Shown in pieces: positions 10,275 to 62,209 of a DNA stretch of 64,000 bases (within the stretch, counting starts at the first letter, position 1; every line of letters starts with the position of its first letter). The position numbers were made by a program, and so were the translations under genes. The notes beneath the pieces are model-generated. The model had not been told where the DNA came from. It did no database searches and saw only the letters and a list, made by a program, of their open reading frames with translations. The stretch is taken from sequence record MK308676.1; one strand, written 5' to 3'.

Positions 10275-12096
10275 CGTACCTTCAGCCAGTTCGTTAGACT
10301 GACCCGCAGCATGACCTGCTAAGCTCTAGGGTTTCCCACTAGACGACTCACCTTCGTGAGAAGGGCATTTGACTGCCGTCGAGACTATATCATCGGTTCC
10401 TCTCAAGGACACCGCCTCATGCTTCGCCCGCACTTGCTGGGCTAGCGCTAACTTATTCCGCTATTAGGATAGCATCTGTTAGCATTAGTCGTTGAACCTG
10501 CCACAGTTTAAAGTAGCTCGGCTGCTGATTACCAATTCCATGTTCCCTTAGGAGTGTCATCGCGACAGGTCCATAGGACATCTCTTATGTTCTTTCTGTT
10601 TTCACAGCCTTTCCATCTGAACTTTCGTTCTCTGTTTCGGCCATAAGAGCTTTACGGATTTCCAGCAATTCAAAAGGTTTTACTTCGACTTAGATTTCCA
10701 GCTTCTCAATCTTTTTATGTTAATGTTAAAGCGCCCAAGCAAAGGGACGTTTTTCTTTTCAGCGTTTCTTATTGTAGACTCAGCTATGCCTATTTGCTTA
10801 GCAACTTGCTGTATGGAAGTGCCTACGTAGATTTCTTTAGTTAAGGGGTCCTCTACAGTAACGATGGCCGAAATGCGACTAGCGTCCTTCAGGATAGCGC
10901 CTTCCGCTTCTGTAAAGTCTGGCCATTCAGGTTTGTCCAAAACGGGACGAACCACGTAGCCTCGGCACGGGACATCGTCGAAGGTACTCTTCATCCTGGA
11001 AACATTCGACTCCACTGTCCCTATGTATCTGGCAGCTGCTCCGGAACTTTCAAAGATTTTTACTTCTCCGAAACTTTCCGGGCGATAGCTTTTTACCATA
11101 CAGGACGCGCACATACCAGAGCGACCAACCTGTTTTTCTAGCTCCGACGCCACCGGTACCGGCAATCCGCTGTCTTCATAGGAAAAAGCATATGTGCCCT
11201 TTTCATTTAGCTGATAGACGGCTTCTTCTGCGGCTCTTCTAGAAAGGCGGTCCACGCTATTGAAGTGCATGCCTGTGGCTTTAGCGGCCACCGTAGAGGA
11301 ACTATATATTTCCTGAGTGTTTTCTCTAACGTCAAAAACACAAACTCTTCTACCCTTCCCTTTTCTTGAGATGTTCTTTTCTTTCCCGGCGTTCTTGCTC
11401 TGAGTAAGCCATTGAAGGTTACTGAGCCCATCATTAAAGCCATCAGTATCCTTATGGTCACACTCTAAAACATCCACGTTAGCCGGATAGTCTTTAAAAG
11501 CCAGTAGTTTCGCTCTGCCTCTCCCAAGTAACAGATGTCGCCCCAAGTCGTCTAAAATACTGGCCTTCATATAACGACCATGTATGCTAAATGAATGGGT
11601 CTTTCCGGTTGCTCCATTCAGCAATAGACCTTCTTTAGACAGTCCGTATTTCGTACAGCCTGGAATCCTAAAGTAATTTGGATTTTTTCTAAGCGGCAGG
11701 GGTTTGGTAAACCCATACGTTAGATTACCTGGATGTAGATTATTACGGTCACCGTCTATGAACAATGGGCGTATTTTTCTTACTTCTTCCAGAGAAAAAG
11801 CGAAGAGTTTCTTCCATGCCCAGACCATAACTTTAGCGATGGCCACTTCCACACGGCCATTATCGCTTTTTAAGAATACGCTTTTGTTTCTTCCATTGAC
11901 TTTGCGGACACATTTTGCTTCCGTTCCGTCACTAGAATAAACATTACCCTTTTTGTCTAGCCAGAGACCATAGTTTGGAATCTCGACTCGACTAACATTA
12001 ACATAACCACTTAAACGTTCTCTTTTCATAGCTTATCTCCTCTATGATATCCGTTTTTATGGTTTATTTTGATTTAAAAAACTTACCCTTCTTTTA
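10275..12096 (-). mobile_element. Group I intron (1822 nt) with homing endonuclease
   Basis: Exon ends in U and intron ends in G; P AAUUGCUGGAAA (~10659-10670), Q AAUCAGCAG (~10522-10530), R UUCAACGACUA (~10486-10496), S GAUAUAGUC (~10383-10391); IGS GUCGAAGU 10682-10689. Confidence 0.9.
10680..12029 (-). CDS. Intron-encoded HNH homing endonuclease
   Basis: CDHKDTDGFNDGLSNLQW HNH motif; degenerate upstream copy FIDGDRNNLHPGNL; NUMOD4-like and NUMOD1-like HTH repeats; GAGGAG RBS. Confidence 0.85.
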   Translation of the reverse strand: MKRERLSGYVNVSRVEIPNYGLWLDKKGNVYSSDGTEAKCVRKVNGRNKSVFLKSDNGRVEVAIAKVMVWAWKKLFAFSLEEVRKIRPLFIDGDRNNLHPGNLTYGFTKPLPLRKNPNYFRIPGCTKYGLSKEGLLLNGATGKTHSFSIHGRYMKASILDDLGRHLLLGRGRAKLLAFKDYPANVDVLECDHKDTDGFNDGLSNLQWLTQSKNAGKEKNISRKGKGRRVCVFDVRENTQEIYSSSTVAAKATGMHFNSVDRLSRRAAEEAVYQLNEKGTYAFSYEDSGLPVPVASELEKQVGRSGMCASCMVKSYRPESFGEVKIFESSGAAARYIGTVESNVSRMKSTFDDVPCRGYVVRPVLDKPEWPDFTEAEGAILKDASRISAIVTVEDPLTKEIYVGTSIQQVAKQIGIAESTIRNAEKKNVPLLGRFNINIKRLRSWKSKSK

Positions 12097-13434
12097 ATCG
12101 AAATCTGCGTTAGGTCCCACCAGTGCAAGGACCGAGAGTGCTATCTCGCATTCGCTTAGGCCCACGATTCTTAATCCTTGCGTGCTAGACCTTGCAAGAC
12201 TAGGATAACGAGTCAGAGCACACTTAATGCCGCCGCCCTTACGCTTACGTGTACGCAACGTAGAAGGCAGTTCTTTAAGTGTAGGGTTACCAGCCGCATC
12301 TTTTACTACGATGGTCTGAGCAACGCTCTCAGGAGTCGGAGGAGTATCATCGATAAGTTCTTCCAGGACATCTACAAGTAGAGGGTCCCAATCCGTAGCA
12401 TGTTGTAGTACGTAGGCTTGGGCCTGAGCGTGACTAAACTTATGTTTCCGGATGAGCTTAGCGATGACTAATGGTTCCAGACAAGTTAACATCTGATGGT
12501 ACGGTACGAGAATAGTATCGTACTCATGAGGACGATGATAAGACGTGATGATGTTACGGAACGAGTAGTTCATGCGCGTACCGAAGTTCACACGGCGTAA
12601 CCAACCAGACTTAGACGATAAGTTGTTTTCGATAACGTCTTTATAGTAGTTGGTTAAGTCTACCATGATGTTAGTAAAGCGAGTCTCTAATCGCTTCACG
12701 TTTATCATGCCCATTGTGCCGGCTGCGGCAAAGATAGCTTCCATTGCAGAAGCCATTGTCTTATCGTAGTAGTTACCGTAAGCTGTTGACTCGATGGCAA
12801 ATGCTACTTTAGACGGGATTGGAATGTGCTTAACGAATAGATGCTCACGGTACTCTTCCACAAACTCTTTCAGTTCTTGGCGTTTCTGCACGGAGGCAGT
12901 CTGGCGTAAAGCAACTTCTAGAATCTTGTCGAACTCTTCTTTTACATTAGAGAGGCCACGTTTAAGACCTAGCTTCTTGAAGTGCTCTACAATAGAGGTA
13001 CCTTTCTTCTTAGACTCATCTGGGTCAGGCAGCTTAGGGTCCATTGCCCACTGCAAGCCATCGAAGCCACGGTTATCCTTTAAGCGTTCGCTTAGGAAAA
13101 TCCAAGGCAGTGGTGCTAAGAAGTAATCGATGCCGCGAGGAACAGAAATCCAGATTTCCGATTCGATTGCTTGGTTGTGGTGAGATACCACTTTGGTGTT
13201 ACAGTGTTCACAGATAACACCGAGGTTAACTGCTTCTTTTGTCTTACGACAACCACACTGAGGCACAGTAGCTAAAACATCCGAAGACTCATACTTAGTC
13301 ACCGTCAATGACTCAAGTAGCTTTCGGTCTTCTTCGGTTTCAAGTTTCAGTTCGTTTACGATGACCGGAGGGTTTTCCATTGAAGATAAACGCCAGTCCA
13401 AGTTACCGAATTTTAGAACCTGTGTTCCTAACAT
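12097..13434 (-). CDS. rpoC: nvRNAP beta' N-subunit (phiKZ gp55-like), exon 1
   Basis: Zn-finger CGC..CEHC, KSGWLRR..FGTR, TRYPSL, ends GPNADFD. Confidence 0.9.
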
Positions 13435-14332: not shown

Positions 14333-16237
14333 TTAAGAAGTCACACCGTAACGGTATTGAGAACGACCTGCTTGGTATGCACCTTCACCGTATACACCAC
14401 GTTGTGATGTTGCAGTTTGGAATGCTTGACCAGGCTGGAACGCTTGACCAGCGTTGAAGCCGTGTACGCCTTGAGTGTTGTCGTAGTCAGTGTCAACCAG
14501 ACCTTCAGTGTTTAGAACCATGCCGCTGTTGATAACTGCTTGCATGAACGCTGGAAGGAAATCTGGAGAGTAGAAGAAACGGTCGTAGATACCGTCAATG
14601 TCTGCATTAACTACTTGCTTAAGGATTTCACGACGAGTGTGGATGTTCACAAGACCTTGTGGACCATTACAGCCGCCAGGTACTAGAGACTGCTGGAACT
14701 CACGCATGCGAGTGCCTGCTTCTGCACCGAACAGTTGTAGCATCTGTAGCTGACCACATTCACGTAGGTCGTGAGTGTTACCTTCTTTATCTGTGTAAGT
14801 ACCAGCATGAACAGCAACAGCTTGAGGCTGTAGTACTGGACGTGCTTCGTTACCCCAGATTGGAAGGAAGTGTCCGCCTAGGAATTGGTCTACTAGAGCT
14901 ACGAATTCTGCGTTTGCTTGTAGACGGTCTTGGTCATCACCTAGAACCGATGCAACTAGAAGTTCGTAAATCCATGCAGTACGACCACCACGCAGTACGT
15001 CGAATGCCACAGTGATTGTGTCATGTACGTTACGTGCAATGTACTGGTCAAGTGATACGCGGCCAGTTGTGTCCATACCCATAGATACAGATTTGTCTAG
15101 CTCAATTTCACATGGTGCCCAATCTTCAGCGCCAGTCATACGACCGTCCCACTGATAGTTAAGAACGCCTAGTGAAGGTTTGCCACCAAAGTTACGACGG
15201 AAGACCTGCTTGTAGTTCTGGCCAGACGCTTGCTGTGCAAGTGCTAGTAGGCTGAACAGTACAGTTTCTTCAGACTCGTATGCTTTAGCAGTGTGTGGGT
15301 CAATACCTTGAGCCACTGATTGAACTAGTAGAGGGTGGTACGCACGACGTACGAATTCACCGTTTTCTAGACGCACTGCATCGTTAGATGGAGCGAATAC
15401 GAAATCTACGTAAGTTTCAGCTTGGGCTAGAGTGATACGACGCTCACGGTTGTTACGAGAACGTTTAGCGTTACCGCGACGAGTACGTGCTTCACCAACA
15501 GTTACTGTAGAAGTAATGTCAGTGTAAGTTGGGTTACCTTCTACGTCAGATGTAGTTGAACCTGGGTTCACTTCATGACCGATTTCGATAGTAAGACCAC
15601 GGCTCACGATGTCTGGTGCGCTTACGGTAATGTTGCTGTTTAGAGACATTAGGTTACGTTCAGCTGTTGCGTATAGACAGCCTAGGTAAGCTTCATTCGT
15701 TAGGTCCATTGATGCACGAGCAGTCATGAAGCCGTTTTGAATGTAGTCTACAGTAGCACCGGTACGACGTACAACTTCGTCTGTGATAGCGTTAACAAGA
15801 ACGGCATCCCAGAACTCTGAAGTATCTGCGTCAAGAAGGATTGGTTGGTTTTCAACGATGATTTCTTCGCCTTTAACCGCGCCTTCATATGCACCTTCTT
15901 CGATTAGGATGGTGTAGAAACCTTTAGTCTCACCTACAGTGTTGTAGGCTACGATTGCAGGTACACCTACCTTCATGTCATCGTCGATTGCGATGAACTG
16001 AAGACCTAGTGCGTTGCGAGAAGCTTTCTTCTCAGTAGCAGCACGCTCATTAAGGAACGCTATGCCAGCTGTGATAGCTTCGTTGGTGCGACCAGTGAAG
16101 TCAGAAGCAGAGCCTAGAACTTGGTCTAGGAAGTTGCCGCCCATCGGTGCAGACTGTTGTGCAGCTGCGCCTTGCTCAGGTGCGTTAGTTTCAGTTTGTG
16201 CTTCTTTCTTAGCTTTGTTACCTTTAGGGTCGAACAT
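14333..16237 (-). CDS. chmA: Chimallin, phage nuclear shell protein
   Basis: 634 aa, disordered N/C termini, strong codon bias, canonical position between DNA pol/gp52-like and beta'; ends RYG; early promoter upstream. Confidence 0.8.
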   Translation of the reverse strand: MFDPKGNKAKKEAQTETNAPEQGAAAQQSAPMGGNFLDQVLGSASDFTGRTNEAITAGIAFLNERAATEKKASRNALGLQFIAIDDDMKVGVPAIVAYNTVGETKGFYTILIEEGAYEGAVKGEEIIVENQPILLDADTSEFWDAVLVNAITDEVVRRTGATVDYIQNGFMTARASMDLTNEAYLGCLYATAERNLMSLNSNITVSAPDIVSRGLTIEIGHEVNPGSTTSDVEGNPTYTDITSTVTVGEARTRRGNAKRSRNNRERRITLAQAETYVDFVFAPSNDAVRLENGEFVRRAYHPLLVQSVAQGIDPHTAKAYESEETVLFSLLALAQQASGQNYKQVFRRNFGGKPSLGVLNYQWDGRMTGAEDWAPCEIELDKSVSMGMDTTGRVSLDQYIARNVHDTITVAFDVLRGGRTAWIYELLVASVLGDDQDRLQANAEFVALVDQFLGGHFLPIWGNEARPVLQPQAVAVHAGTYTDKEGNTHDLRECGQLQMLQLFGAEAGTRMREFQQSLVPGGCNGPQGLVNIHTRREILKQVVNADIDGIYDRFFYSPDFLPAFMQAVINSGMVLNTEGLVDTDYDNTQGVHGFNAGQAFQPGQAFQTATSQRGVYGEGAYQAGRSQYRYGVTS

Positions 16238-25327: not shown

Positions 25328-25365
25328 AGCTGGAAACCTTTTTATTTATGATGATAACTATGGGA

Positions 25366-25376
25366 GTAATATAGGT
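25366..25376 (-). promoter_or_regulatory. Early promoter ACCTATATTAC heading the paralog array
   Basis: Exact TATATTAC. Confidence 0.65.
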
Positions 25377-25515
25377 ATAAAAATATCTAGAAATCAGGCT
25401 AAATCCAATAGGGTGACGAAGCCTTTATTTATAAGGGTCTTCAAAATCCTATTTTCGCTCAGGCCTTTATTCTATTGGATTCAGGCTGCATGTTAAAGAA
25501 TACAAAGGGACCGCT

Positions 25516-29113: not shown

Positions 29114-29737
29114 TTAGTTTGTTGGTTTGAATTGAGAACCATCGTCAAGATGTTCTTGAAGGATTTCGATATATTCAGCAATTGCCTGGCGCGGATGGTC
29201 TTGCATATAAGAATCCATAATAGGGAGTAAGTCTTCTATCTTAAGACGCATACCTTCACGGTGCGCAATCATAGCGGTCCTACGAGGCTCTATAAAGGCC
29301 TTAGTTGAACCATTTGGCATATGTAGTACAATATTAACTACGGGACCGTTCTTGTTCTTAGCGACCCATAGAGGAAGGTCTTTGCCCTTTCTATTGGCAG
29401 GGAAAAGATTTCTATGTTCTGAACGGAATACTACAAAGTCAGATAGGCCGATTGAGCTTTTGCCGAAACGTAGAGCAGTGTTCATGATAACGGTATCGTG
29501 GCCATCTAGCATATGCTCCTGTGCGACGATATGGCGGCGGAAAGCTTTCAGCGATAGAATGTCATCATCTAACTCCCAACCGTTCTCCTGAGCATCAACA
29601 AGCAGCTTGCGCCACTTGTTGAAGTAAGGACAAGATTTTAGTTTACCGTCTTCTTTAAATGAAGTTGGCCAGTCTGCATCGTTAATGCCGATGCCTGCAA
29701 TAATTTTACTTCGCATGTTTGCCCCACTGAGGTTCAT
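29114..29737 (-). CDS. Degenerate phage HNH-family-like protein
   Basis: IAGIGINDADW...CPYFNKW. Confidence 0.55.
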   Translation of the reverse strand: MNLSGANMRSKIIAGIGINDADWPTSFKEDGKLKSCPYFNKWRKLLVDAQENGWELDDDILSLKAFRRHIVAQEHMLDGHDTVIMNTALRFGKSSIGLSDFVVFRSEHRNLFPANRKGKDLPLWVAKNKNGPVVNIVLHMPNGSTKAFIEPRRTAMIAHREGMRLKIEDLLPIMDSYMQDHPRQAIAEYIEILQEHLDDGSQFKPTN

Positions 29738-30359
29738 AACGTCTGTGGCTATGGATATGTTCTTCTAGATGAATCATGAAACGATGGAAAGCCATCTTAG
29801 CATGCCAATGGTGGTCAGAATAGAAATCGGACAACCACTGCGCATTATTGACTTTCGCTTGAGCGGCTGCTACGTGAGCATCTAAAGCATCCGCCATTAT
29901 CTGGCAGAACTTCTTACGAGGACGCTTGTTCTCTTCGGAAGGCATATATTTGACCTGAGCCTGGTAGCCTCCTGCGACGTAGTGCGATGTCCACAGAGGT
30001 AAGGTGCGGTCGTATCTGATTCTAGGGAAGAAGTTACGATGGTGACGATGTAGTACAACAATATTGTCCAAGGAGACATAGTCGAGATTTAGAATCTCAC
30101 TCATCATTACGATGGTTGTTGGTTGGTCACCGAATGCCTTTTCTTGCTGTTCGACGTGTTTCTTGAAGTTCTCGAACTGCGCGAAGTCAGGACGTACTTC
30201 AACCTTAGCAATCTTAGCACGGCGCAGAATACCTGCCCAAGAGGTGTAATAAGGGCAACGAATCTTCTTAACCTTACCGCCTACGTGTTCAGTCCAGGCT
30301 ACCTGAGTTTCTTTAAAGCGGCGGCCTGCGCCGTAGAGTAATTTAGTTTGCTGCATCAT
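29706..30359 (-). CDS. Degenerate HNH-family-like paralog
   Basis: LLYGAG...CPYYTSWAGILRR. Confidence 0.55.
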   Translation of the reverse strand: MMQQTKLLYGAGRRFKETQVAWTEHVGGKVKKIRCPYYTSWAGILRRAKIAKVEVRPDFAQFENFKKHVEQQEKAFGDQPTTIVMMSEILNLDYVSLDNIVVLHRHHRNFFPRIRYDRTLPLWTSHYVAGGYQAQVKYMPSEENKRPRKKFCQIMADALDAHVAAAQAKVNNAQWLSDFYSDHHWHAKMAFHRFMIHLEEHIHSHRRYEPQWGKHAK

Positions 30360-30837
30360 AGCGCTCCTTAGATACTTTGAATGAATGTTCAGAACGTTCA
30401 GTCAATAACCATTCTTCCGTAAGTTCTCTTAGGTAGTACAACTCATCGGAACGGTTAGTGATTTTAGGATGGTTCTCTTCTTTATAGAACTCGATTAGTA
30501 AAAGAAGCTCATCTGTAAGGAAGTTAGCTGAGTCCGCCACATGAATGCGAGAACTGAGCAGTTTAGGCTCCGGCTTCTTCTCGCCGCCGAAACGGAACAG
30601 GTTAGTCTTTATACTATCCAGTGTGGTTATCACCTCACCATTGACGTCCAGTAAGAACTCCTTACTAGGACATAGAGGCAGAGTGTTAAATAAAGGAGTG
30701 CCGGTATGTAGGATTGCTTTCACCTGACCTTTAAAGGACTTACCTATCCACTTCATACTAACAGTTTCCAGAGACACGTGTACATTTGAAGTAGAACAGA
30801 ATTTAGTGATGGCGCCAATAGTTTTTACGATTTCCAT
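30343..30837 (-). CDS. Hypothetical protein
   Basis: 164 aa, GAGGA RBS. Confidence 0.6.
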   Translation of the reverse strand: MEIVKTIGAITKFCSTSNVHVSLETVSMKWIGKSFKGQVKAILHTGTPLFNTLPLCPSKEFLLDVNGEVITTLDSIKTNLFRFGGEKKPEPKLLSSRIHVADSANFLTDELLLLIEFYKEENHPKITNRSDELYYLRELTEEWLLTERSEHSFKVSKERYDAAN

Positions 30838-30857
30838 TTGAATATCCTCGTTTATAA

Positions 30858-30905
30858 GTTAATATCATAAAGGCCTCTCTTAACGAGAAGCCTTGAGTTA
30901 TTAAC
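30858..30905 (-). promoter_or_regulatory. T7-like RNase III-style hairpin A
   Basis: 7-bp stem, ACUC/UAUGA loop, 10-bp stem. Confidence 0.55.
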
Positions 30906-31458
30906 TAAATGGTTTCTGGGTAGTTGTATGCTCTTCTAAGAGCTCGCAGAGTTTAAGCATTGAATCCTTCGTAGGAGAACCTTTAGGGTACTCTCCGGCA
31001 ATTCTACGCACGTTACGGTTAGTTAACTCTAGACAGGCGAAGTGAAGTTCTCGCTCGTCCCAATGAACTGCATAACGCGGCTTGACCTCACCGTAAACCT
31101 TAAAGGCACATGTAAAGCTTTCTTGAAACTCGTCCTTACCTGGGTGCGTCCATTTAAGAGTCGTTCCTTTCCTTTCATTTAAGAAACGGAAGTATCCTGC
31201 GTGGAGTTTATCCACAGATACCAAAGAGGCTAATGGGTTCTTAGGGTCGAAACTAACCTTAGAGAAGTCCAGTAACATCTGGGTAGCTGGGTTGTGACGG
31301 ATGTAGATTAAGTGGTCTAGGTATTCCTTAACGCCAGGATAGACCATACCTTCCACATTGGCCGACTTTAGTTTATTGCGTAGGACTTGCACGCGGTTAT
31401 AAACCGTATGCGCATCCATCTGAACCAAGTCGCCAGTTAAGCTAGTCCAATGGTACAT
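30901..31458 (-). CDS. Hypothetical protein
   Basis: 185 aa, GAGGAG RBS. Confidence 0.65.
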   Translation of the reverse strand: MYHWTSLTGDLVQMDAHTVYNRVQVLRNKLKSANVEGMVYPGVKEYLDHLIYIRHNPATQMLLDFSKVSFDPKNPLASLVSVDKLHAGYFRFLNERKGTTLKWTHPGKDEFQESFTCAFKVYGEVKPRYAVHWDERELHFACLELTNRNVRRIAGEYPKGSPTKDSMLKLCELLEEHTTTQKPFS

Positions 31459-31467
31459 GTTTACTCC

Positions 31468-32310
31468 TCAAAGTAGTTTGCCCGCGAACAGTCCAATCAT
31501 GAACGTAGCGAAACAGATAATGCTCCACTCACCATGGCCTAAGCGGAACATGCCAGGCTTAAAGTGTTCTGGTTCCTTAGTAGAAACAAAAGACTCGCCT
31601 AAGGCTTCGTCCATCATCGCTTTTTCTTGATACTCTGTAATGAAAGTAATGTGTGCGCCTAGGCTCACGTCGGCAGCGAAAGAGCGCAGAGGGAAAGACC
31701 CTACATATTCCGTGCCCGCATACATGTCTAGACCAACATAGTCCGTACCAAAACGAACTACGCGGAAGCCAAAGCCGCTTTCTAGGTTATGGAACCATTC
31801 CCCGTTATTATCCACAGTAAGCCCATCGAAGTATTCGCGAGACATTGCGCCAATAAGCTTTACGTCGTCTGCGAAAGGAGTCCCTTCGAATTCTTGATAC
31901 TTGCGACCCAGGTAGTAATCGGCCATATGTTTCGCGCGCGCTTGTTGCTCTTTACACAACTTCTCAAATTCTTCGATAGTCATAGCGCTACTATCAAACC
32001 ACTCACTAATTGCGGCATGTAATAGTGGGAACTCGGCGACGTGTACATATGAGGACGGCTCGCCGCTGTTCGCGCCGGAGATAAGAAATGCTTCGCCATC
32101 ACAGCTTATACAAAGACCTGCGCGGGTAATCCATTTGTTTTCGTCTACCATTTGGTTATCGGTAAAATATTCTTCTTTACCAATAAAGCCAGCCAGTAAA
32201 CCGCCGAGAACATTGAAGTCCTTGCAGAGAGGGCTACGTAAAAATAGACCCACTTCTTGTTCTAGGCCTGAAGGGGCAGCTGTAGTAGTTTGTTGTTTTT
32301 GATTTAACAT
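31468..32310 (-). CDS. Tail-anchored membrane protein
   Basis: C-terminal TM ending AGKLL. Confidence 0.65.
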   Translation of the reverse strand: MLNQKQQTTTAAPSGLEQEVGLFLRSPLCKDFNVLGGLLAGFIGKEEYFTDNQMVDENKWITRAGLCISCDGEAFLISGANSGEPSSYVHVAEFPLLHAAISEWFDSSAMTIEEFEKLCKEQQARAKHMADYYLGRKYQEFEGTPFADDVKLIGAMSREYFDGLTVDNNGEWFHNLESGFGFRVVRFGTDYVGLDMYAGTEYVGSFPLRSFAADVSLGAHITFITEYQEKAMMDEALGESFVSTKEPEHFKPGMFRLGHGEWSIICFATFMIGLFAGKLL

Positions 32311-32333
32311 GATGTTTTTCCTTATTTAAGGTT

Positions 32334-32384
32334 GAGTAAAAATCATAAAGGACCCTCGCTAGAAGGCCCTTGAGTTTATCACTC
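32334..32384 (-). promoter_or_regulatory. T7-like RNase III-style hairpin B
   Basis: Same ACUC/UAUGA loop with a different upper-stem sequence. Confidence 0.55.
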
Positions 32385-32765
32385 TGGTTCAGTGTAGACT
32401 TCGGTCTTGTCGTACCGGATGGTCTGGAAGTAGTTATCTTCGTACTCATCCCGTACTTTCTCAGCCAGCGGCTCCAAGACATGAATTAGATTACGCCAGC
32501 TAATGAACTTCATTCGAGCATTGCCGCAGAAACATAGGCCATCTTTACAGGACGTGTAGTAGATGCCAATGTAGTTGCCTTCCTTGGCCATGATGGCCAA
32601 GTTCTGTTTATCGATAATGTAAGCCGTGAAGTACTCGTTTGGATTGAAGTTATTCATCCAAAGCTTATCGAAGGTAATCTCAGTTTTGAAGGAACTGGCA
32701 CGCTCTAGATTATATTCCTCTAGCTTGCCTTCTTCAATGAGAGCTTTTATTTCATTTACGTTCAA
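32379..32765 (-). CDS. Hypothetical protein
   Basis: 128-aa ORF, in-operon. Confidence 0.6.
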   Translation of the reverse strand: MNVNEIKALIEEGKLEEYNLERASSFKTEITFDKLWMNNFNPNEYFTAYIIDKQNLAIMAKEGNYIGIYYTSCKDGLCFCGNARMKFISWRNLIHVLEPLAEKVRDEYEDNYFQTIRYDKTEVYTEPE

Positions 32766-33919: not shown

Positions 33920-33956
33920 TGGGAACTCCTTAGTTTAAGGGTTTAAAATCAATTAG

Positions 33957-33967
33957 GCTATATAGGT
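33957..33967 (-). promoter_or_regulatory. Early-promoter-like ACCTATATAGC
   Basis: Recurrent motif. Confidence 0.55.
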
Positions 33968-33977
33968 TATAGTTTAA

Positions 33978-35078
33978 TTAAAACCAGCCAAACAGTTTAC
34001 CTGCAAGTGCTAGCGTAGCAGCGGCAAAGAACGAATACTCCAACACTGTAACCCAAGTAGCTTGTTCGGTTGCCTTAGGGCGGCACTGTATTGGAGCAGG
34101 GATTGGAGCAATCTTGTCCTCTTCTTCTTTAACGGGGAACACGCGCTTGTTTAGACTGTCGCGTATGTCCATGGCAGCATTGATTCTGTGTTCGGGAACA
34201 GGACTCAATTCTTTAACTGCCTCCAAACGAGCAGGGACGTCGTCTTCCTTTTTAGCCATGAGTACGTCCCTTAGACCAGTTAAGGCCGCATCGTTATTGA
34301 GGCGCTCTATGTCCCGAGCTGTTCTTTCCTTGGGATAAGAAGCCAAGAAACGGTCTCTAGCTTTAATCGCAGAACAGTCGCTCTCTAAACCTACCTTAAA
34401 TAGGTAATTACAAAGCACGTTAGCGAATGCTTGTTGGGCGCGCGACCAGACAATGAAGCTGCTCACGATTTGGTCCTCTAGAGTAACGTGTGCGATAATG
34501 ACATCGGTAGGAGAAACCAGTTTAATACCTAGCCCTTTAAACGGGCCTTCTACGCAAAGGAAGCGCCCGTGGATTTTACCCCCGTTGTCAGGTTCTGCCT
34601 GACGAAGGTAGAAATCTGGACGAGTAAAGAAGTCACGGATGAATTCTCGTGTTTCTTCCTGAACGCGTTCCTTTTGTTGTGAACGATGACGTTCCTTTTC
34701 GCAAGCGGACATACCGAAGAACTCTTGAGTGTAGAACTGAACATAAGACTCACCAAAGTGATTAAGTCCCGCAGCCAGCAAAGAATAGATAACCGGATAG
34801 TGACTCTTGGAGACAACCGCTTCTACCTCGCGGTTCTGAACCGTGATGAAGTTTTCAGTTTGTATGACGTCTGTGCCCTCAAGCTTCCAGTGCCCCGAGG
34901 CAACAGATTCGAAGCGCTTTTGACAAAAAGAAGCAAATGCACAGAATATAAGTAAGCCAGCTTTTTCACCATAGCTTTCAGTAAAAGCATCTAGTTCTTT
35001 CCTAGCAGGTTTTTCTTCATTGTGAATTTCGCCCATAAGGTAAGATGCGATTTTTAAGGACTCTTCATAATGTGACAT
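33978..35078 (-). CDS. Tail-anchored membrane protein, paralog of 31468..32310
   Basis: C-terminal TM ending AGKLFGWF. Confidence 0.65.
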   Translation of the reverse strand: MSHYEESLKIASYLMGEIHNEEKPARKELDAFTESYGEKAGLLIFCAFASFCQKRFESVASGHWKLEGTDVIQTENFITVQNREVEAVVSKSHYPVIYSLLAAGLNHFGESYVQFYTQEFFGMSACEKERHRSQQKERVQEETREFIRDFFTRPDFYLRQAEPDNGGKIHGRFLCVEGPFKGLGIKLVSPTDVIIAHVTLEDQIVSSFIVWSRAQQAFANVLCNYLFKVGLESDCSAIKARDRFLASYPKERTARDIERLNNDAALTGLRDVLMAKKEDDVPARLEAVKELSPVPEHRINAAMDIRDSLNKRVFPVKEEEDKIAPIPAPIQCRPKATEQATWVTVLEYSFFAAATLALAGKLFGWF

Positions 35079-40270: not shown

Positions 40271-40310
40271 GATATGTTATCCTTTATTTTAATGATAGAA
40301 ATTCATAAGG

Positions 40311-40321
40311 GTAATATAGGT
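40311..40321 (-). promoter_or_regulatory. Early promoter ACCTATATTAC
   Basis: Exact TATATTAC. Confidence 0.65.
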
Positions 40322-40475
40322 TATACTTTTACTTGAATAATATTATAGAGGGAATCATGCCTCACGCGCGGGGCATCCAATCTTTAGCCTACCTGTCTCC
40401 GGACGGGTAGGTTCCTCTACCCTATAAACAAAAAAGAATATTAACCTGCCCTCCATAAAAGGAGAGCAGGCTATT

Positions 40476-43662: not shown

Positions 43663-43707
43663 TAAGAGCTCCTAAGATTGTAACAATCCGAATATAAAAT
43701 CATGAAG

Positions 43708-43718
43708 GTAATATAGGT
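43708..43718 (-). promoter_or_regulatory. Early promoter ACCTATATTAC
   Basis: Exact TATATTAC. Confidence 0.65.
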
Positions 43719-43789
43719 TTCAAGACTTGATGAAACGAATCATCTAGAACCCCTTCATTTTTAACCGTTTAATCTTAAAGGTTTAACTC

Positions 43790-57139: not shown

Positions 57140-57188
57140 GATAGTCTCCTGGTTGTTGTATGGGAATTACCCGTTTAAATGCATAAAG

Positions 57189-57199
57189 ACAATATAGGT
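57189..57199 (-). promoter_or_regulatory. Early-promoter-like ACCTATATTGT
   Basis: Recurrent motif. Confidence 0.6.
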
Positions 57200-57205
57200 G
57201 ATAGA

Positions 57206-57646
57206 TTACTTTGAACGATACAAGTATGTAAACTCTCGTGGCGTGAATGTCAATACTCTACGTGATAAGAACGCATTGTAAATATCGACACCAACATCGT
57301 GCTGTTCAAAGTTAACTACTTGACGCACGGCCTCAGGGCGGTTGCGTTGTAGTGGTCGCTCAAAGGAGAAGCCGATGATGTCACCGCGAGGGATTGAAAC
57401 CGTATGGCCTTCGATTGGCTGGAACGTGATAAGGTCGCCGTCTTCTTCAAAGTCATAAGACAGGAAGATGTCCATAGCTTGACGAGGAGAGGATTTTAAC
57501 TCCTTCCCGAATTCGCCATAGGTATTGCAACTTTCTTCACGCACCCATTCTAAGTTCGCAGTATCGAACATCATCGATACGGCCTGATATTGCTTCATGG
57601 TGTTATCCATGCAGCGCAATAGCTCTGCTGTATTACCTAACCACAT
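57206..57646 (-). CDS. Hypothetical protein
   Basis: 146-aa ORF, AGGAG RBS. Confidence 0.55.
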   Translation of the reverse strand: MWLGNTAELLRCMDNTMKQYQAVSMMFDTANLEWVREESCNTYGEFGKELKSSPRQAMDIFLSYDFEEDGDLITFQPIEGHTVSIPRGDIIGFSFERPLQRNRPEAVRQVVNFEQHDVGVDIYNAFLSRRVLTFTPREFTYLYRSK

Positions 57647-57957: not shown

Positions 57958-58066
57958 TTTCTTTTCCTAATGGATTTTAAGAGGTAGTTAATAAAGTTTA
58001 AGTAGATTGTATCAAGATACATCGATAAAAGGCTCTGTGTGCGTTACAGAGCCTTTAGGCAAGTAT

Positions 58067-58861
58067 CTAAGCTAACTTGTTCACGTCGATATTCCATTTG
58101 CGGAAACGCTCAGGGTTATCGGTGTTCCAAGGAATCTCTCCACCTAGTATGCCCCAGATGACTCCGTTGGGTAGTCCGAAGAACGGATGGTCTCTCGGTA
58201 AGTCACAGCGTTTAGCGTCCGGATGGTTGATTGGGCTAGCTTGTTCGTCTTCGTTCGCAACACCGAACAGGAAGTAGCTATCTACCGACCCTTCGAAGTG
58301 ACCGTCTGGATTCTTACCTATTGCTGAAGCTCGAGGTATGTATGCGGACGGTTGAATGTTTACGATGATGGTTGCGTCATCTAAGTGAGTAACCAATAAG
58401 CCGCGTCCGACTTCTAGGTTCTGTCCTTTAGGGATAACGCTGTCCAAATCCCAACGAGTGAACTCTTGGTATGTAGGGTGGCACATCGCTTCTTCTACAC
58501 GGTTACGTGCAGCCATCTTGCGAGCTTGACGCTCAGAACGAGGACGCAGTTGGATAACTGGCGACTCGGATGCTCTCTGAGGTTTAACCTCTCGAACATA
58601 AGGTTTCGTATTAAGGTTAGGGTTAGCGTCGACTTTAGGTTGGTCGTAGCGAGGACGGCTAGGTACTTCTACAACTTTCTCTTGGACAACAACTTTCTCT
58701 ACCTCTACGATTTTAGGTTCTACTGGGTCAACCGCTATTTGTAGCGTCTCGACACGAGCCCACGCAGACGGCTCAAAGAAACCTAAGGAAAGGATTACTA
58801 ACAGTGCAGTTGCAAAGTTAGCAATAGCCTTGCCCAAGCGCGTAAAGATATTACTTAACAT
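58067..58861 (-). CDS. Exported or membrane-anchored protein
   Basis: Signal-like N-terminus, Pro/Val-rich linker. Confidence 0.65.
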   Translation of the reverse strand: MLSNIFTRLGKAIANFATALLVILSLGFFEPSAWARVETLQIAVDPVEPKIVEVEKVVVQEKVVEVPSRPRYDQPKVDANPNLNTKPYVREVKPQRASESPVIQLRPRSERQARKMAARNRVEEAMCHPTYQEFTRWDLDSVIPKGQNLEVGRGLLVTHLDDATIIVNIQPSAYIPRASAIGKNPDGHFEGSVDSYFLFGVANEDEQASPINHPDAKRCDLPRDHPFFGLPNGVIWGILGGEIPWNTDNPERFRKWNIDVNKLA

Positions 58862-58882: not shown

Positions 58883-58932
58883 GCTAACGCCAGAGGAGTG
58901 CCCTCGTTAGAAGACACTCGAGTTGCGTTAGC
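58883..58932 (-). repeat. 50-nt structured repeat, copy 1 (RNase III-style hairpin C)
   Basis: 49/50 identical to 60237..60286. Confidence 0.8.
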
Positions 58933-60236: not shown

Positions 60237-60286
60237 GCTAACGCCAGAGGAGTGCCCTCGCTAGAAGACACTCGAGTTGCGTTAGC
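60237..60286 (-). repeat. 50-nt structured repeat, copy 2 (hairpin D)
   Basis: Single difference falls in the tetraloop (UAAC vs UAGC). Confidence 0.8.
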
Positions 60287-61705: not shown

Positions 61706-61738
61706 TGTCCTTAATGATAGAAAGTTAATTACACGAGG

Positions 61739-61749
61739 GCAATATAGGT
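61739..61749 (-). promoter_or_regulatory. Early-promoter-like ACCTATATTGC
   Basis: Recurrent motif. Confidence 0.6.
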
Positions 61750-61757
61750 TTTAATAA

Positions 61758-62027
61758 TTATGCAGCTTTTGCACAATCGTCAAAGAAGTAAATCGGTTTA
61801 GCCATAATGCGTGCTTTAGCGTGAGCTGAAGTGTAAACATCTTTAAGGCGAGCTGGTGCAAAGAAAACTTCTTCCCATAGACGTGGATTGAAGTAAAGCA
61901 CAAGTAAAGCGATTGGTGAAACGACAGAAAGGATTGCCGATAGGAAAGCAAGCACTTCTAGTACAAAGCTGCCAACGTAGTAAAGTGGACGGTTAGCAAG
62001 TACAATGTTTTTAGTTTTAGCGAACAT
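61758..62027 (-). CDS. Early membrane protein (MFAKTK)
   Basis: AGGAG RBS. Confidence 0.65.
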   Translation of the reverse strand: MFAKTKNIVLANRPLYYVGSFVLEVLAFLSAILSVVSPIALLVLYFNPRLWEEVFFAPARLKDVYTSAHAKARIMAKPIYFFDDCAKAA

Positions 62028-62098: not shown

Positions 62099-62132
62099 TT
62101 TAAAGGATTAATATAAGAGTGAGAGCATAAAG

Positions 62133-62150
62133 ATAATATGGGTTTTACTT
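62133..62150 (-). promoter_or_regulatory. Early-promoter-like AAGTAAAACCCATATTAT
   Basis: Variant of the recurrent motif. Confidence 0.5.
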
Positions 62151-62209
62151 TTTCTTGAAAACGTGAAATAGGTAAGGATACGAGCCGAAGCCCGTATCCC
62201 TTTTATGCG

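What the first reader, a model, noticed from the sequence alone, without database searches (positions are those of the whole stretch)
30858..32384. T7-like RNase III processing signals in a jumbo phage early operon
Hairpin A (30858-30905): GUUAAUA-ACUC-AAGGCUUCUC-GUUAA-GAGAGGCCUU-UAUGA-UAUUAAC. Hairpin B (32334-32384) has different stem sequences but the identical 4x5 internal loop ACUC/UAUGA and AAGG/CCUU. This closely matches my recollection of T7 R1.1 (AACUCAAGG...GCCUUUAUGAU, asymmetric 4/5 loop). Each sits just 5' of the next gene's RBS, so host RNase III could segment early polycistronic mRNA exported from the vesicle or nucleus. A looser candidate lies at 58016-58067. I am not aware of this being described for Chimalliviridae.
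Basis: partly seen in the sequence, partly recalled or inferred. Interest (0 to 1): 0.7.

Follow-up and report, generated by a model that had tools for sequence, protein, structure and literature searches.

The report
T7-type RNase III hairpins in jumbo vibriophage
Two RNA hairpins in a 290-kb Vibrio jumbo phage are near-perfect copies of the RNase III cutting signals of the unrelated small phage T7, but they are the only two in the genome and bracket two orphan genes, so they look like a borrowed processing cassette rather than a general jumbo-phage strategy.

Summary
Both hairpins (minus strand, window 30858-30905 and 32334-32384) carry the bipartite motif ACUCAAGG...CCUUUAUGA, which is identical in T7 R0.3, R0.5 and R1.1. 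A covariance model built only from T7-like phages scores them 60.6 and 48.9 bits. Authentic T7 sites score 43-67 bits. Upper-stem length, loop size, proximal-box and distal-box pairs all equal natural T7 sites. Each hairpin overlaps the upstream stop codon and precedes the next ribosome-binding site.

The window is Vibrio phage vB_VmeM-Yong. It has a chimallin homolog and a ΦKZ-style early-promoter motif 1.6 kb upstream, so "jumbo phage early operon" holds.

The whole 290.5-kb genome has only these two sites. They bracket two strict ORFan genes (280 and 185 aa) in a Yong-specific variable region. The relative BONAISHI has none. All other matches found in phage collections are ~40-kb T7-like podoviruses, and hairpin A's best hits are Vibrio cholerae T7-likes.

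Most likely, host RNase III cuts once in each internal loop and releases a ~1.48-kb bicistronic mRNA ending in a protective hairpin. The elements were probably acquired horizontally. The looser candidate at 58016-58067 is terminator-like. No RNA-end data could be obtained.

The parts
32331..32387 (-). Hairpin B, a T7 R0.5-like RNase III signal. Lower stem AGUGAUAA/UUUUUACU has one U.U mismatch. Internal loop is ACUC/UAUGA. Upper stem is 10 bp, loop is UAGC. Predicted single cut after CCUUUAU, between 32345 and 32344.
   Evidence: Motif. Covariance model 48.9 bits, E 1e-9. Fold. 77-nt BLAST match, E 2e-8, to a T7-like coliphage site plus its leader. Distal-box pairs U.G and U-A equal R1.1.
30853..30910 (-). 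Hairpin A, a T7 R0.3-like RNase III signal. Lower stem AGUUAAUA/UAUUAACU. Internal loop ACUC/UAUGA. Upper stem 10 bp, loop GUUAA. Predicted single cut between 30867 and 30866.
   Evidence: Motif. Covariance model 60.6 bits, E 9e-13. Fold z = -5.65. Best BLAST hits are V. cholerae T7-like phages and records annotated 'RNase III recognition site R0.3'.
31468..32310 (-). 280-aa ORFan gene, first gene of the bracketed unit. It has a hydrophobic C-terminal tail. Its SD (AAGGA) and ATG lie 34 nt downstream of the predicted cut in B.
   Evidence: ORF. No homolog in Pfam, PHROGs, tblastn against phages, the 5.8-billion-protein word search, exhaustive phmmer or the Atlas.
30901..31458 (-). 185-aa ORFan gene, second gene of the bracketed unit. 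Its stop codon TAA lies inside the 5' arm of hairpin A's lower stem.
   Evidence: No homologs.
32379..32765 (-). 128-aa gene upstream of hairpin B. Its stop codon TGA lies in the lower-stem 5' arm (GAG-TGA-TAA), the same register as the T7 gene 0.4 stop in R0.5.
   Evidence: T7 CDS end 1433 against the motif at 1437. Bas103 CDS end.
30343..30837 (-). 164-aa gene downstream of hairpin A. Its SD (GAGGA) and ATG lie about 30 nt downstream of the predicted cut.
33945..33978 (-). Copy of the phage's conserved promoter-like motif (consensus ..AAACCTATATTACC..), the presumed vRNAP early promoter. It is the nearest copy upstream of both hairpins.
   Evidence: PWM score 25.3. About 28 copies genome-wide, nearly all leftward and intergenic. 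Interpretation follows PMC7598289.
25354..25387 (-). Next copy of the promoter-like motif downstream. It marks the start of the following transcription unit.
   Evidence: PWM score 23.7.
29114..30359 (-). Two tandem HNH-endonuclease-like ORFs (217 and 207 aa) just downstream in the same unit. They are the only neighbours with BONAISHI homologs.
   Evidence: phrog_953, E 8e-8 and 1e-8. tblastn to BONAISHI.
58016..58067 (-). It is a terminator-like hairpin (GGCUCUGU / ACAGAGCC followed by UUUUAU), not a T7-type site. A promoter-motif copy follows at 57177-57210.
   Evidence: Absent from covariance-model hits at E<=10. Promoter copy.

Best explanation
Hairpins A and B are genuine T7-class RNase III processing signals sitting in a chimallin-encoding Vibrio jumbo phage.

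Inferred mechanism: the leftward early transcript starts near window 33960 and is read through both hairpins. Host (Vibrio) RNase III is cytoplasmic, so it acts after the RNA leaves the phage compartment. It binds the 10-bp upper stem through its proximal and distal boxes. Because of the asymmetric 4x5 internal loop, it cuts only the 3' strand, after CCUUUAU. This should release a bicistronic mRNA of about 1478 nt (the 280-aa and 185-aa genes). Its 3' end would be hairpin A, which protects against 3' exonucleases. Each downstream message would gain a defined 5'-monophosphate end 30-34 nt ahead of its start codon.

Inferred origin: the elements (hairpin plus leader, perhaps the whole cassette) came by horizontal transfer from a T7-like podovirus. 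They are not a family-wide jumbo-phage device.
For: Shown here:
- The 17-nt motif is identical to T7 R0.3, R0.5 and R1.1.
- A covariance model trained only on T7-like hairpins gives 60.6 and 48.9 bits. T7 sites outside the training set score R6.5 51.3, R4.7 44.5 and R18.5 43.5 bits. The next Yong hit is noise at 13.9 bits.
- The model's hits coincide with T3's curated 'RNase III recognition site' stem-loops.
- Upper stem of 10 bp and loops of 4 and 5 nt are the modal values of the family. Distal-box pairs equal R1.1 (hairpin B) and T7 R0.5 (hairpin A). These are the reactivity determinants defined in PMC1540722.
- Stop-codon-in-lower-stem and SD/ATG spacing are as in T7 and Bas103.
- Upper-stem differences from R0.5 are compensatory or wobble changes.
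- The V. cholerae T7-like phage VP3 has 8 model hits, so Vibrio hosts' phages use this same signal.
- Similarity beyond the fixed motif: hairpin B aligns over 77 nt to T7-like coliphage sites, E 2e-8. Variable positions p<0.001. Leader p about 0.01.
- An early-promoter motif lies upstream.
- No phage-encoded RNase III was detectable.
Against: - There are no RNA-end or cleavage data. No sequencing run was listed.
- Only two sites exist, and only in four near-identical isolates, so there is no within-lineage covariation.
- Hairpin B has a U.U mismatch at a lower-stem position that is paired in all 75 T7-like training sequences. Its upper stem plus the tail UAUGAUUUUU passes a loose terminator scan.
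- V. mediterranei RNase III specificity was not examined.
- Access of RNase III to these transcripts in a nucleus-forming infection is assumed.
- The bracketed genes have no T7-like (or any) homologs and no GC deviation, so transfer of the whole cassette is unproven.
Confidence: 0.7

Rival explanations
1. Hitch-hiking relics. The hairpins arrived with DNA recombined from a T7-like phage and persist without a selected role in Yong. They may or may not be cut.
For: Only two copies exist, in a lineage-specific variable region next to HNH endonuclease-like genes. The flanked genes are ORFans. Hairpin B's lower stem is degraded by a mismatch.
Against: Both copies keep all 17 motif bases, full upper stems with compensatory changes, natural distal and proximal boxes, and exact intercistronic placement with stop codon and SD. 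A and B differ from each other about as much as random T7-like pairs (about 54% at the 28 variable positions, counted by hand from the strings). They are therefore not a recent duplication, yet both are intact.
Confidence: 0.14
2. They act mainly as transcription terminators, attenuators or RNase III-independent 3' stabilisers for the phage RNA polymerases.
For: Hairpin B's upper stem passes the simple terminator scan. In the VP3 record four hairpins of this same class are annotated as predicted rho-independent terminators. Many Yong intergenic hairpins are terminator-like.
Against: The U-rich run is separated from the stem by UAUGA. Hairpin A has no U-tract. A conserved, covarying lower stem enclosing a fixed 4x5 loop is not a terminator feature. 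In T7 and T3 the same elements are curated RNase III sites. From my own knowledge they are read through by E. coli RNA polymerase within the T7 early transcript.
Confidence: 0.08
3. Convergent evolution. The jumbo phage evolved the optimal gamma-proteobacterial RNase III substrate independently, without transfer from T7-like phages. The function is the same as in the best explanation; only the origin differs.
For: Part of the similarity is functionally constrained (proximal box, distal box, stem geometry). The bracketed proteins show no T7-like ancestry.
Against: From my own knowledge (Chelladurai et al. 1991, not checked here), the conserved loop sequence is not needed for accurate cleavage in vitro, so 17/17 identity is not forced by catalysis. 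Similarity extends to the lower stem, to the apical loop (UAGCGAG as in R0.5) and to the leader up to AACAUCAUG. BONAISHI has no such site.
Confidence: 0.08

Closest known systems
Phage T7 early RNase III sites R0.5, R0.3 and R1.1 (and T3 R0.3/R0.5)
   Same: Identical ACUC/UAUGA internal loop and AAGG/CCUU proximal pairs. 10-bp upper stem and 8-bp lower stem. The upstream stop codon lies in the lower stem, and the SD/ATG lies about 30 nt downstream. Covariance-model scores fall in the same range. Hairpin B shares R0.5's apical UAGCGAG and its GAGUGAUA lower arm.
   Different: The host genome is a 290-kb chimallin-encoding myovirus transcribed by phage multisubunit RNAPs, not a 40-kb podovirus. 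There are two sites instead of about ten. Hairpin B has a lower-stem mismatch. No T7 0.7-type kinase context is known. Cleavage has not been demonstrated.
RNase III-type hairpins of Vibrio cholerae T7-like phages (VP3, VP4, ICP3, N4)
   Same: Same motif and architecture in phages of the same host genus. These are the best BLAST relatives of hairpin A (80% over 60 nt).
   Different: VP3 carries at least 7 good copies spread across early, middle and late regions. In that record several are annotated as terminators. No gene content is shared with the Yong cassette.
ΦKZ-type early operons (vRNAP promoters, long polycistronic early transcripts)
   Same: AT-rich conserved promoter motif resembling TATATTAC, leftward multigene early units, and a chimallin plus split-RNAP gene set.
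   Different: I found no RNase III processing signals reported for ΦKZ-like phages in the searched library. BONAISHI lacks them.
Promoter/early stem-loop boundary elements of T4-like phages (cassette-flanking repeats that mediate gene shuffling; from my own knowledge, not checked here)
   Same: Conserved short regulatory elements flank variable ORFan genes, and may double as recombination linkers.
   Different: Those elements are promoters and terminators, not RNase III signals, and they recur many times per genome.

Membership tests
T7-group RNase III processing signal (R0.3/R0.5/R1.1 class) | Two-tier hairpin: about 8-bp lower stem, 9-11-bp upper stem, small apical loop | tested here: met
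   A: 8 + 10 bp, loop 5. B: 8 (one mismatch) + 10 bp, loop 4. These are the modal values among 68 unique T7-like sites.
T7-group RNase III processing signal (R0.3/R0.5/R1.1 class) | Conserved asymmetric internal loop ACUC / UAUGA flanked by AAGG / CCUU | tested here: met
   17/17 bases in both copies. Identical in T7 R0.3, R0.5 and R1.1 read from the T7 record.
T7-group RNase III processing signal (R0.3/R0.5/R1.1 class) | Proximal-box and distal-box base pairs compatible with E. coli-type RNase III, and at least 11 bp between scissile bond and loop (PMC1540722) | tested here: met
   The proximal pairs are identical to T7. The pairs next to the loop are U.G, U-A (B, as in R1.1) and C-G, U-A (A, as in T7 R0.5). 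Helix length equals R1.1. Box positions were inferred from the paper's text, because its figure is not held.
T7-group RNase III processing signal (R0.3/R0.5/R1.1 class) | Scores like authentic sites with a sequence-plus-structure model trained without it | tested here: met
   60.6 and 48.9 bits. T7 sites score 43.5-67.3, T3 curated sites 59-69, VP3 sites 24-67. Nothing else in 290.5 kb scores above 14 bits.
T7-group RNase III processing signal (R0.3/R0.5/R1.1 class) | Intercistronic position within a polycistronic transcript, just 5' of the next RBS | tested here: met
   Stop codons lie inside the lower stems. SD/ATG lies 30-34 nt after the predicted cut. The promoter motif is 1.6 kb upstream, and no other copy occurs until 25.4 kb. 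The operon itself is inferred, not mapped.
T7-group RNase III processing signal (R0.3/R0.5/R1.1 class) | Single-strand cleavage by RNase III in the 3' side of the loop, in vitro and in vivo | not testable with these tools
   No RNA runs were listed. Cut positions are predicted by homology. The T7 positions 890, 1468 and 5887 are recalled from Dunn & Studier 1983, and all three map to the same motif position.
T7-group RNase III processing signal (R0.3/R0.5/R1.1 class) | Resides in a T7-like (Autographiviridae) genome | tested here: not met
   The host genome is a 290.5-kb phage with a chimallin homolog (E 2e-31 to BONAISHI ChmA) and split RNAPs (PMC7765460). All other canonical instances found were in contigs or genomes of about 36-45 kb.
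Intrinsic (rho-independent) terminator | G+C-rich stem immediately followed by a U-tract | tested here: not met
   A is not flagged. B is flagged only by a loose rule, and its U-run begins 6 nt after the stem. The 58016-58067 hairpin does meet this feature.
Chimalliviridae-type (nucleus-forming) jumbo phage, as genomic context | Encodes chimallin (ChmA) and virion/non-virion multisubunit RNAPs | tested here: met
   Window 14333-16237(-) against BONAISHI ORF71: E 2e-31 over 578 aa. Weak Pfam PF25677 and PDB 8fne matches. Synteny beside an RNAP subunit gene. RNAP homologs per PMC7765460. Nucleus formation itself has not been observed for this phage.

The most novel reading that the evidence does not exclude
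Compact RNA-processing modules (RNase III hairpin plus translation leader) may be horizontally mobile between unrelated phage families. In a nucleus-forming phage they would act as export-coupled processing signals that set the stability and translation of a few accessory genes. The two 'class II' hairpins at window 58883-58932 and 60237-60286 have the same two-tier geometry, the ACUC 5' loop and hairpin B's apex, but a different proximal box and 3' loop. They could be a lineage-specific derivative of the same element, which would make RNase III processing broader in this phage than the strict T7 motif shows.
Probability: 0.25. Interest if true: 0.65.

Novelty: new member of a known kind. Interest (0 to 1): 0.5.

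Why it matters
T7-type RNase III signals are a textbook feature of one podovirus family. Finding intact copies in a chimallin-encoding jumbo phage matters for three reasons.

1. It shows that such RNA elements cross family boundaries.
2. It offers a clean, sequence-defined handle for asking whether, where and when host cytoplasmic RNases act on transcripts made inside a phage vesicle or nucleus. The predicted ends are known to the nucleotide and can be tested in wild-type versus rnc hosts.
3. It flags two ORFan early genes as being under special post-transcriptional control.

The finding is limited to one phage lineage and two sites. It is a useful curiosity and experimental handle rather than a new principle.

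Tried and rejected
- Rfam gathering scan of the window found only a group I intron, and no family for the hairpins.
- Relaxed motif scans over the whole genome found no further convincing sites.
- A structure-only two-tier descriptor gave 18 hits against 4-10 in shuffles. Most hits were terminators whose A- and U-tracts pair.
- Function and ancestry of the 280-aa and 185-aa proteins: Pfam, PHROGs, tblastn against 50,697 phages, a 5.8-billion-protein word search, exhaustive phmmer over 1.84 billion representatives, and the ESM Atlas all came back empty or at chance level. I therefore did not spend structure predictions on them (Atlas pLDDT 0.57 and 0.39).
- Phage-encoded RNase III: tblastn and phmmer with E. 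coli Rnc found nothing.
- ΦKZ gp054 as a chimallin probe failed. BONAISHI ChmA succeeded.
- Sequencing runs: two look-ups, none listed.
- Exact-motif hits in large viral contigs (L015, L035, L037, L076, L083) were rejected as non-hairpin chance matches.
- The class II hairpin has no convincing relative outside Yong.
- GC content of the cassette is not deviant, so it gives no compositional evidence for transfer.
- I did not fetch pir03 or full ΦKZ. I did not scan host genomes for rnc.
Full report
IDENTITY AND ORIENTATION

The window is 99-100% identical to the four Vibrio mediterranei jumbo phage isolates vB_VmeM-Yong XC31, XC32, MS31 and MS32, which are about 290.5 kb. Around the finding, window position + 61999 = XC31 record position. 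All genes here are on the minus strand, so the hairpins must be read as reverse complement.

OBSERVATION

The bipartite pattern ACTCAAGG-N(8-36)-CCTTTATGA occurs twice in the window, and none was expected in shuffles. Each half alone is not enriched.

Both sites fold as two-tier hairpins. They remain the dominant structure within 550-nt transcripts. The one caveat is that hairpin B's lower stem is weakened by a U.U mismatch.

COMPARISON WITH REAL T7 SITES

I did not rely on memory for the T7 sequences. I read the T7 record (L002). R0.3, R0.5 and R1.1 carry exactly the same 8+9-nt motif, and R4.7 and R18.5 carry near-variants.

After filtering for a canonical upper and lower stem, every instance lay in a contig of about 38-46 kb, which is T7-like. 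The hits in contigs of 58-240 kb were non-hairpin chance matches.

From 75 distinct canonical instances, with the window excluded, I built covariance model R1. It encodes an 8-bp lower stem, a 4/5 internal loop and a 9-bp upper stem. The training alignment shows strong covariation: 96.5% of cells are paired, and all 8 lower-stem pairs show compensatory changes.

MEMBERSHIP TEST

Bit scores of model R1:

| Target | Hits (bits) |
|---|---|
| Whole Yong genome | Hairpin A 60.6 (E 9e-13); hairpin B 48.9 (E 1e-9); next best 13.9 (E 3.6) |
| T7, sites in training set | R0.5 67.3; R1.1 61.7; R0.3 57.2 |
| T7, sites not in training set | R6.5 51.3; R4.7 44.5; R18.5 43.5; R1.3 21.2 |
| T3 curated 'RNase III recognition site' stem-loops | R0.5 69.4; R0.3 59.3 |
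| VP3 (V. cholerae T7-like) | 8 hits, five above 62 |

Four of the VP3 hits are annotated in that record as predicted terminators.

Feature by feature, the Yong upper stems are 10 bp (the family mode) and the loops are 4 and 5 nt (the modes). The two pairs next to the closing pair are U.G/U-A in B, identical to R1.1. In A they are C-G/U-A, identical to T7 R0.5.

Pertzev & Nicholson (PMC1540722) define the determinants of E. coli RNase III reactivity:
- a distal box beside the tetraloop (canonical UA/UG);
- a 4-bp proximal box beside the scissile bond;
- at least 11 bp between the scissile bond and the loop.

They also state that internal loops restrict cleavage to one phosphodiester, which leaves a 3' hairpin that protects against 3'-5' exonucleases. 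On all these counts the Yong hairpins equal natural T7 substrates.

PLACEMENT

The stop codon of the 128-aa gene is the TGA in hairpin B's lower arm (GAG-TGA-TAA). This is the same register as the T7 gene 0.4 stop in R0.5 and as the equivalent coliphage Bas103 gene. The 185-aa gene's TAA lies in hairpin A's lower arm. Each hairpin is followed by an SD and an ATG.

By homology with T7, the cuts should fall after CCUUUAU. This rests on cleavage positions 890, 1468 and 5887, which I recall from Dunn & Studier 1983. All three map to the same motif position. The predicted cuts are between window 32345 and 32344, and between 30867 and 30866. That would give a bicistronic RNA of about 1478 nt.

TRANSCRIPTION CONTEXT

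An intergenic k-mer survey and a PWM found a conserved motif, consensus aAAa.TaAAACCTATATTACC. It has about 28 copies, and nearly all are leftward and intergenic. It fits the description of vRNAP early promoters in RNAP-encoding jumbo phages, namely an AT-rich conserved motif of about 10 nt upstream of early operons (PMC7598289).

One copy lies at window 33945-33978, which is 1.6 kb upstream of hairpin B. The next is at 25354-25387. Both hairpins are therefore internal to one leftward unit. This is an inference, because no transcription start sites have been mapped.

IS THE PHAGE CHIMALLIVIRIDAE-LIKE?

Yes, at the sequence level. The 634-aa ORF at window 14333-16237(-) sits beside an RNAP subunit gene, as ΦKZ gp054 does. 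It matches BONAISHI ORF71, the ChmA of that phage according to PMC10587174, with E 2e-31 over 578 aa. It also gives weak but collinear matches to Pfam PF25677 and to ΦPA3 PhuN. Yong proteins are the best hits of several pir03 RNAP subunits (PMC7765460).

HOW GENERAL IS THE FEATURE?

It is not general.
- The entire 290.5-kb genome has only these two sites.
- BONAISHI (289 kb) has no motif match. Its single 22-bit model hit lies inside the helicase ORF and lacks the upper stem.
- None of the genes around the hairpins has a BONAISHI homolog, except the two HNH-like ORFs.
- The pir03 paper lists no best hit to this block.
- The two bracketed proteins are strict ORFans in every search.

ORIGIN

BLAST of each hairpin plus leader against 50,697 phage genomes returned 200 and 267 records. 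Apart from the four Yong isolates, every listed record is a T7-like genome of 36-45 kb (plus one partial T7 record), including an evenly spread sample of hairpin B's whole ranking. In several records the matched feature is annotated as an RNase III site, R0.3 or R0.45.

Hairpin A's best hits are V. cholerae T7-like phages. Hairpin B aligns over 77 nt (79.5% identity, E 2e-8) to the R0.5-type site of coliphages Bas103 and EG1. That alignment includes the apical UAGCGAG, the lower arm and the leader up to AACAUCAUG.

Outside the fixed motif:
- Identity at the 28 variable stem positions reaches 0.71 (B) and 0.68 (A), with p<0.001 against shuffles. The Yong sites sit at the divergent edge of the family.
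- Leader-only similarity gives p about 0.01 (B) and 0.03 (A).
- Upper-stem differences from T7 R0.5 are compensatory or wobble changes.
- A and B differ from each other as much as average T7-like pairs do, so they are two distinct site types, not a recent duplication.

I read this as horizontal acquisition from a T7-like phage. Co-infection of vibrios is plausible, and homing-endonuclease-like genes sit next door. Convergence remains a weaker alternative. Transfer of the protein-coding cassette itself is unproven.

RIVAL READINGS

A terminator role is weakly suggested for hairpin B by a loose scan. It is contradicted by three points: the UAUGA spacer, the absence of a U-tract in A, and the covarying lower stem. 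A relic status cannot be excluded without expression data.

THE THIRD CANDIDATE

The 58016-58067 hairpin has a G+C-rich stem followed immediately by UUUUAU, and a promoter-motif copy lies just downstream. The model does not find it at any threshold tried. It is terminator-like.

UNEXPECTED EXTRA

The hairpin survey found two copies of another two-tier hairpin, at window 58883-58932 and 60237-60286 (minus strand). Its layout is lower stem GCUAACGC/GCGUUAGC, internal loop AACUC/CUCUG, 10-bp upper stem. The 13-nt apex CUUCUAGCGAGGG is identical to hairpin B's in the 60237-60286 copy and differs by one base (A for G) in the 58883-58932 copy. Each copy again lies just 5' of an SD and ATG. It has no counterpart in T7-like loci or in other phages. 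It may be a diverged derivative and a second class of processing site. This is untested.

LIMITS

- No cleavage or RNA-end evidence is available.
- Host RNase III specificity is inferred from its ubiquity in gamma-proteobacteria and from the VP3 sites.
'Unique among jumbo phages' is therefore shown only for BONAISHI, a 22-kb piece of ΦKZ, and the sampled collections.

Noticed in passing
window 58883-58932 (-) and 60237-60286 (-): A second two-tier hairpin family ('class II'). Layout: GCUAACGC - AACUC - 10-bp stem - UAAC or UAGC - stem - CUCUG - GCGUUAGC. It shares the ACUC 5' loop with hairpin B; the 13-nt apex is identical to B's in the 60237-60286 copy and differs by one base in the other. 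Each copy lies immediately 5' of an SD and ATG with a conserved leader (AUAAGGAAUACU.UUAUG). It is not detected by the T7-trained model and has no relatives outside Yong.
   Followed up: partly
window 10362-10756 (-), with ORF 10680-12029 (-): Rfam group I intron (RF00028, 53.8 bits). It overlaps or adjoins a 449-aa ORF with NUMOD1 and HNH_3 domains, likely a homing endonuclease. This lies beside the RNAP subunit gene at 12094-13434.
   Followed up: no
window 33945-33978, 25354-25387, 40299-40332, 43696-43729, 57177-57210, 61727-61760, 62121-62154 (all -) and about 20 more genome-wide: Conserved promoter-like motif aAAa.TaAAACCTATATTACCtttAtG, almost exclusively leftward and intergenic. It is presumably the vRNAP early promoter of this phage and resembles ΦKZ's TATATTAC core. 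A second, rarer intergenic motif AATCTTATAG (6 copies) may mark another promoter class.
   Followed up: partly
window 14333-16237 (-): A 634-aa chimallin (ChmA/PhuN) homolog. It is annotated only as a hypothetical protein in the GenBank records.
   Followed up: yes
L008:33078-33134 (-) (XC31 record 283078-283134, outside the window): Another intergenic two-tier hairpin with a 4x5 internal loop (AUCC/UACAA), a 13-bp upper stem and a 9-bp lower stem. It is unrelated in sequence to the T7 motif.
   Followed up: no
window 29114-30359 (-): Two tandem paralogous HNH-endonuclease-like ORFs (217 and 207 aa) directly downstream of the cassette. Their homologs in BONAISHI are at about 214.5-217 kb. They could have promoted recombination in this variable region.
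   Followed up: partly
L131 (Vibrio phage VP3) 8205-8260, 10585-10640, 12976-13033, 17535-17592: Four features annotated in the VP3 record as 'predicted rho-independent transcription terminators' (T2-T5) coincide with T7-type RNase III hairpins scoring 24-67 bits. These are probably misannotated.
   Followed up: partly
window 31468-31530 and 33978-34040 (C-terminal ends of the 280-aa and 366-aa ORFs): Both proteins end in a hydrophobic, tail-anchor-like segment (..IICFATFMIGLFAGKLL and ..FFAAATLALAGKLFGWF).
   Followed up: no
L133:35924-35972 (+) (BONAISHI): A marginal model hit (22.2 bits, E 0.023) inside the helicase ORF. It has lower-stem and loop halves (ACUC..UAUGA) but only 16 nt in between. 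Probably chance.
   Followed up: no
window 1 to about 17600: The window is out of register by 1 nt with the XC31 record over roughly its first 17.6 kb. This points to a single-base indel between isolates, so the window probably derives from another of the four Yong isolates.
   Followed up: no
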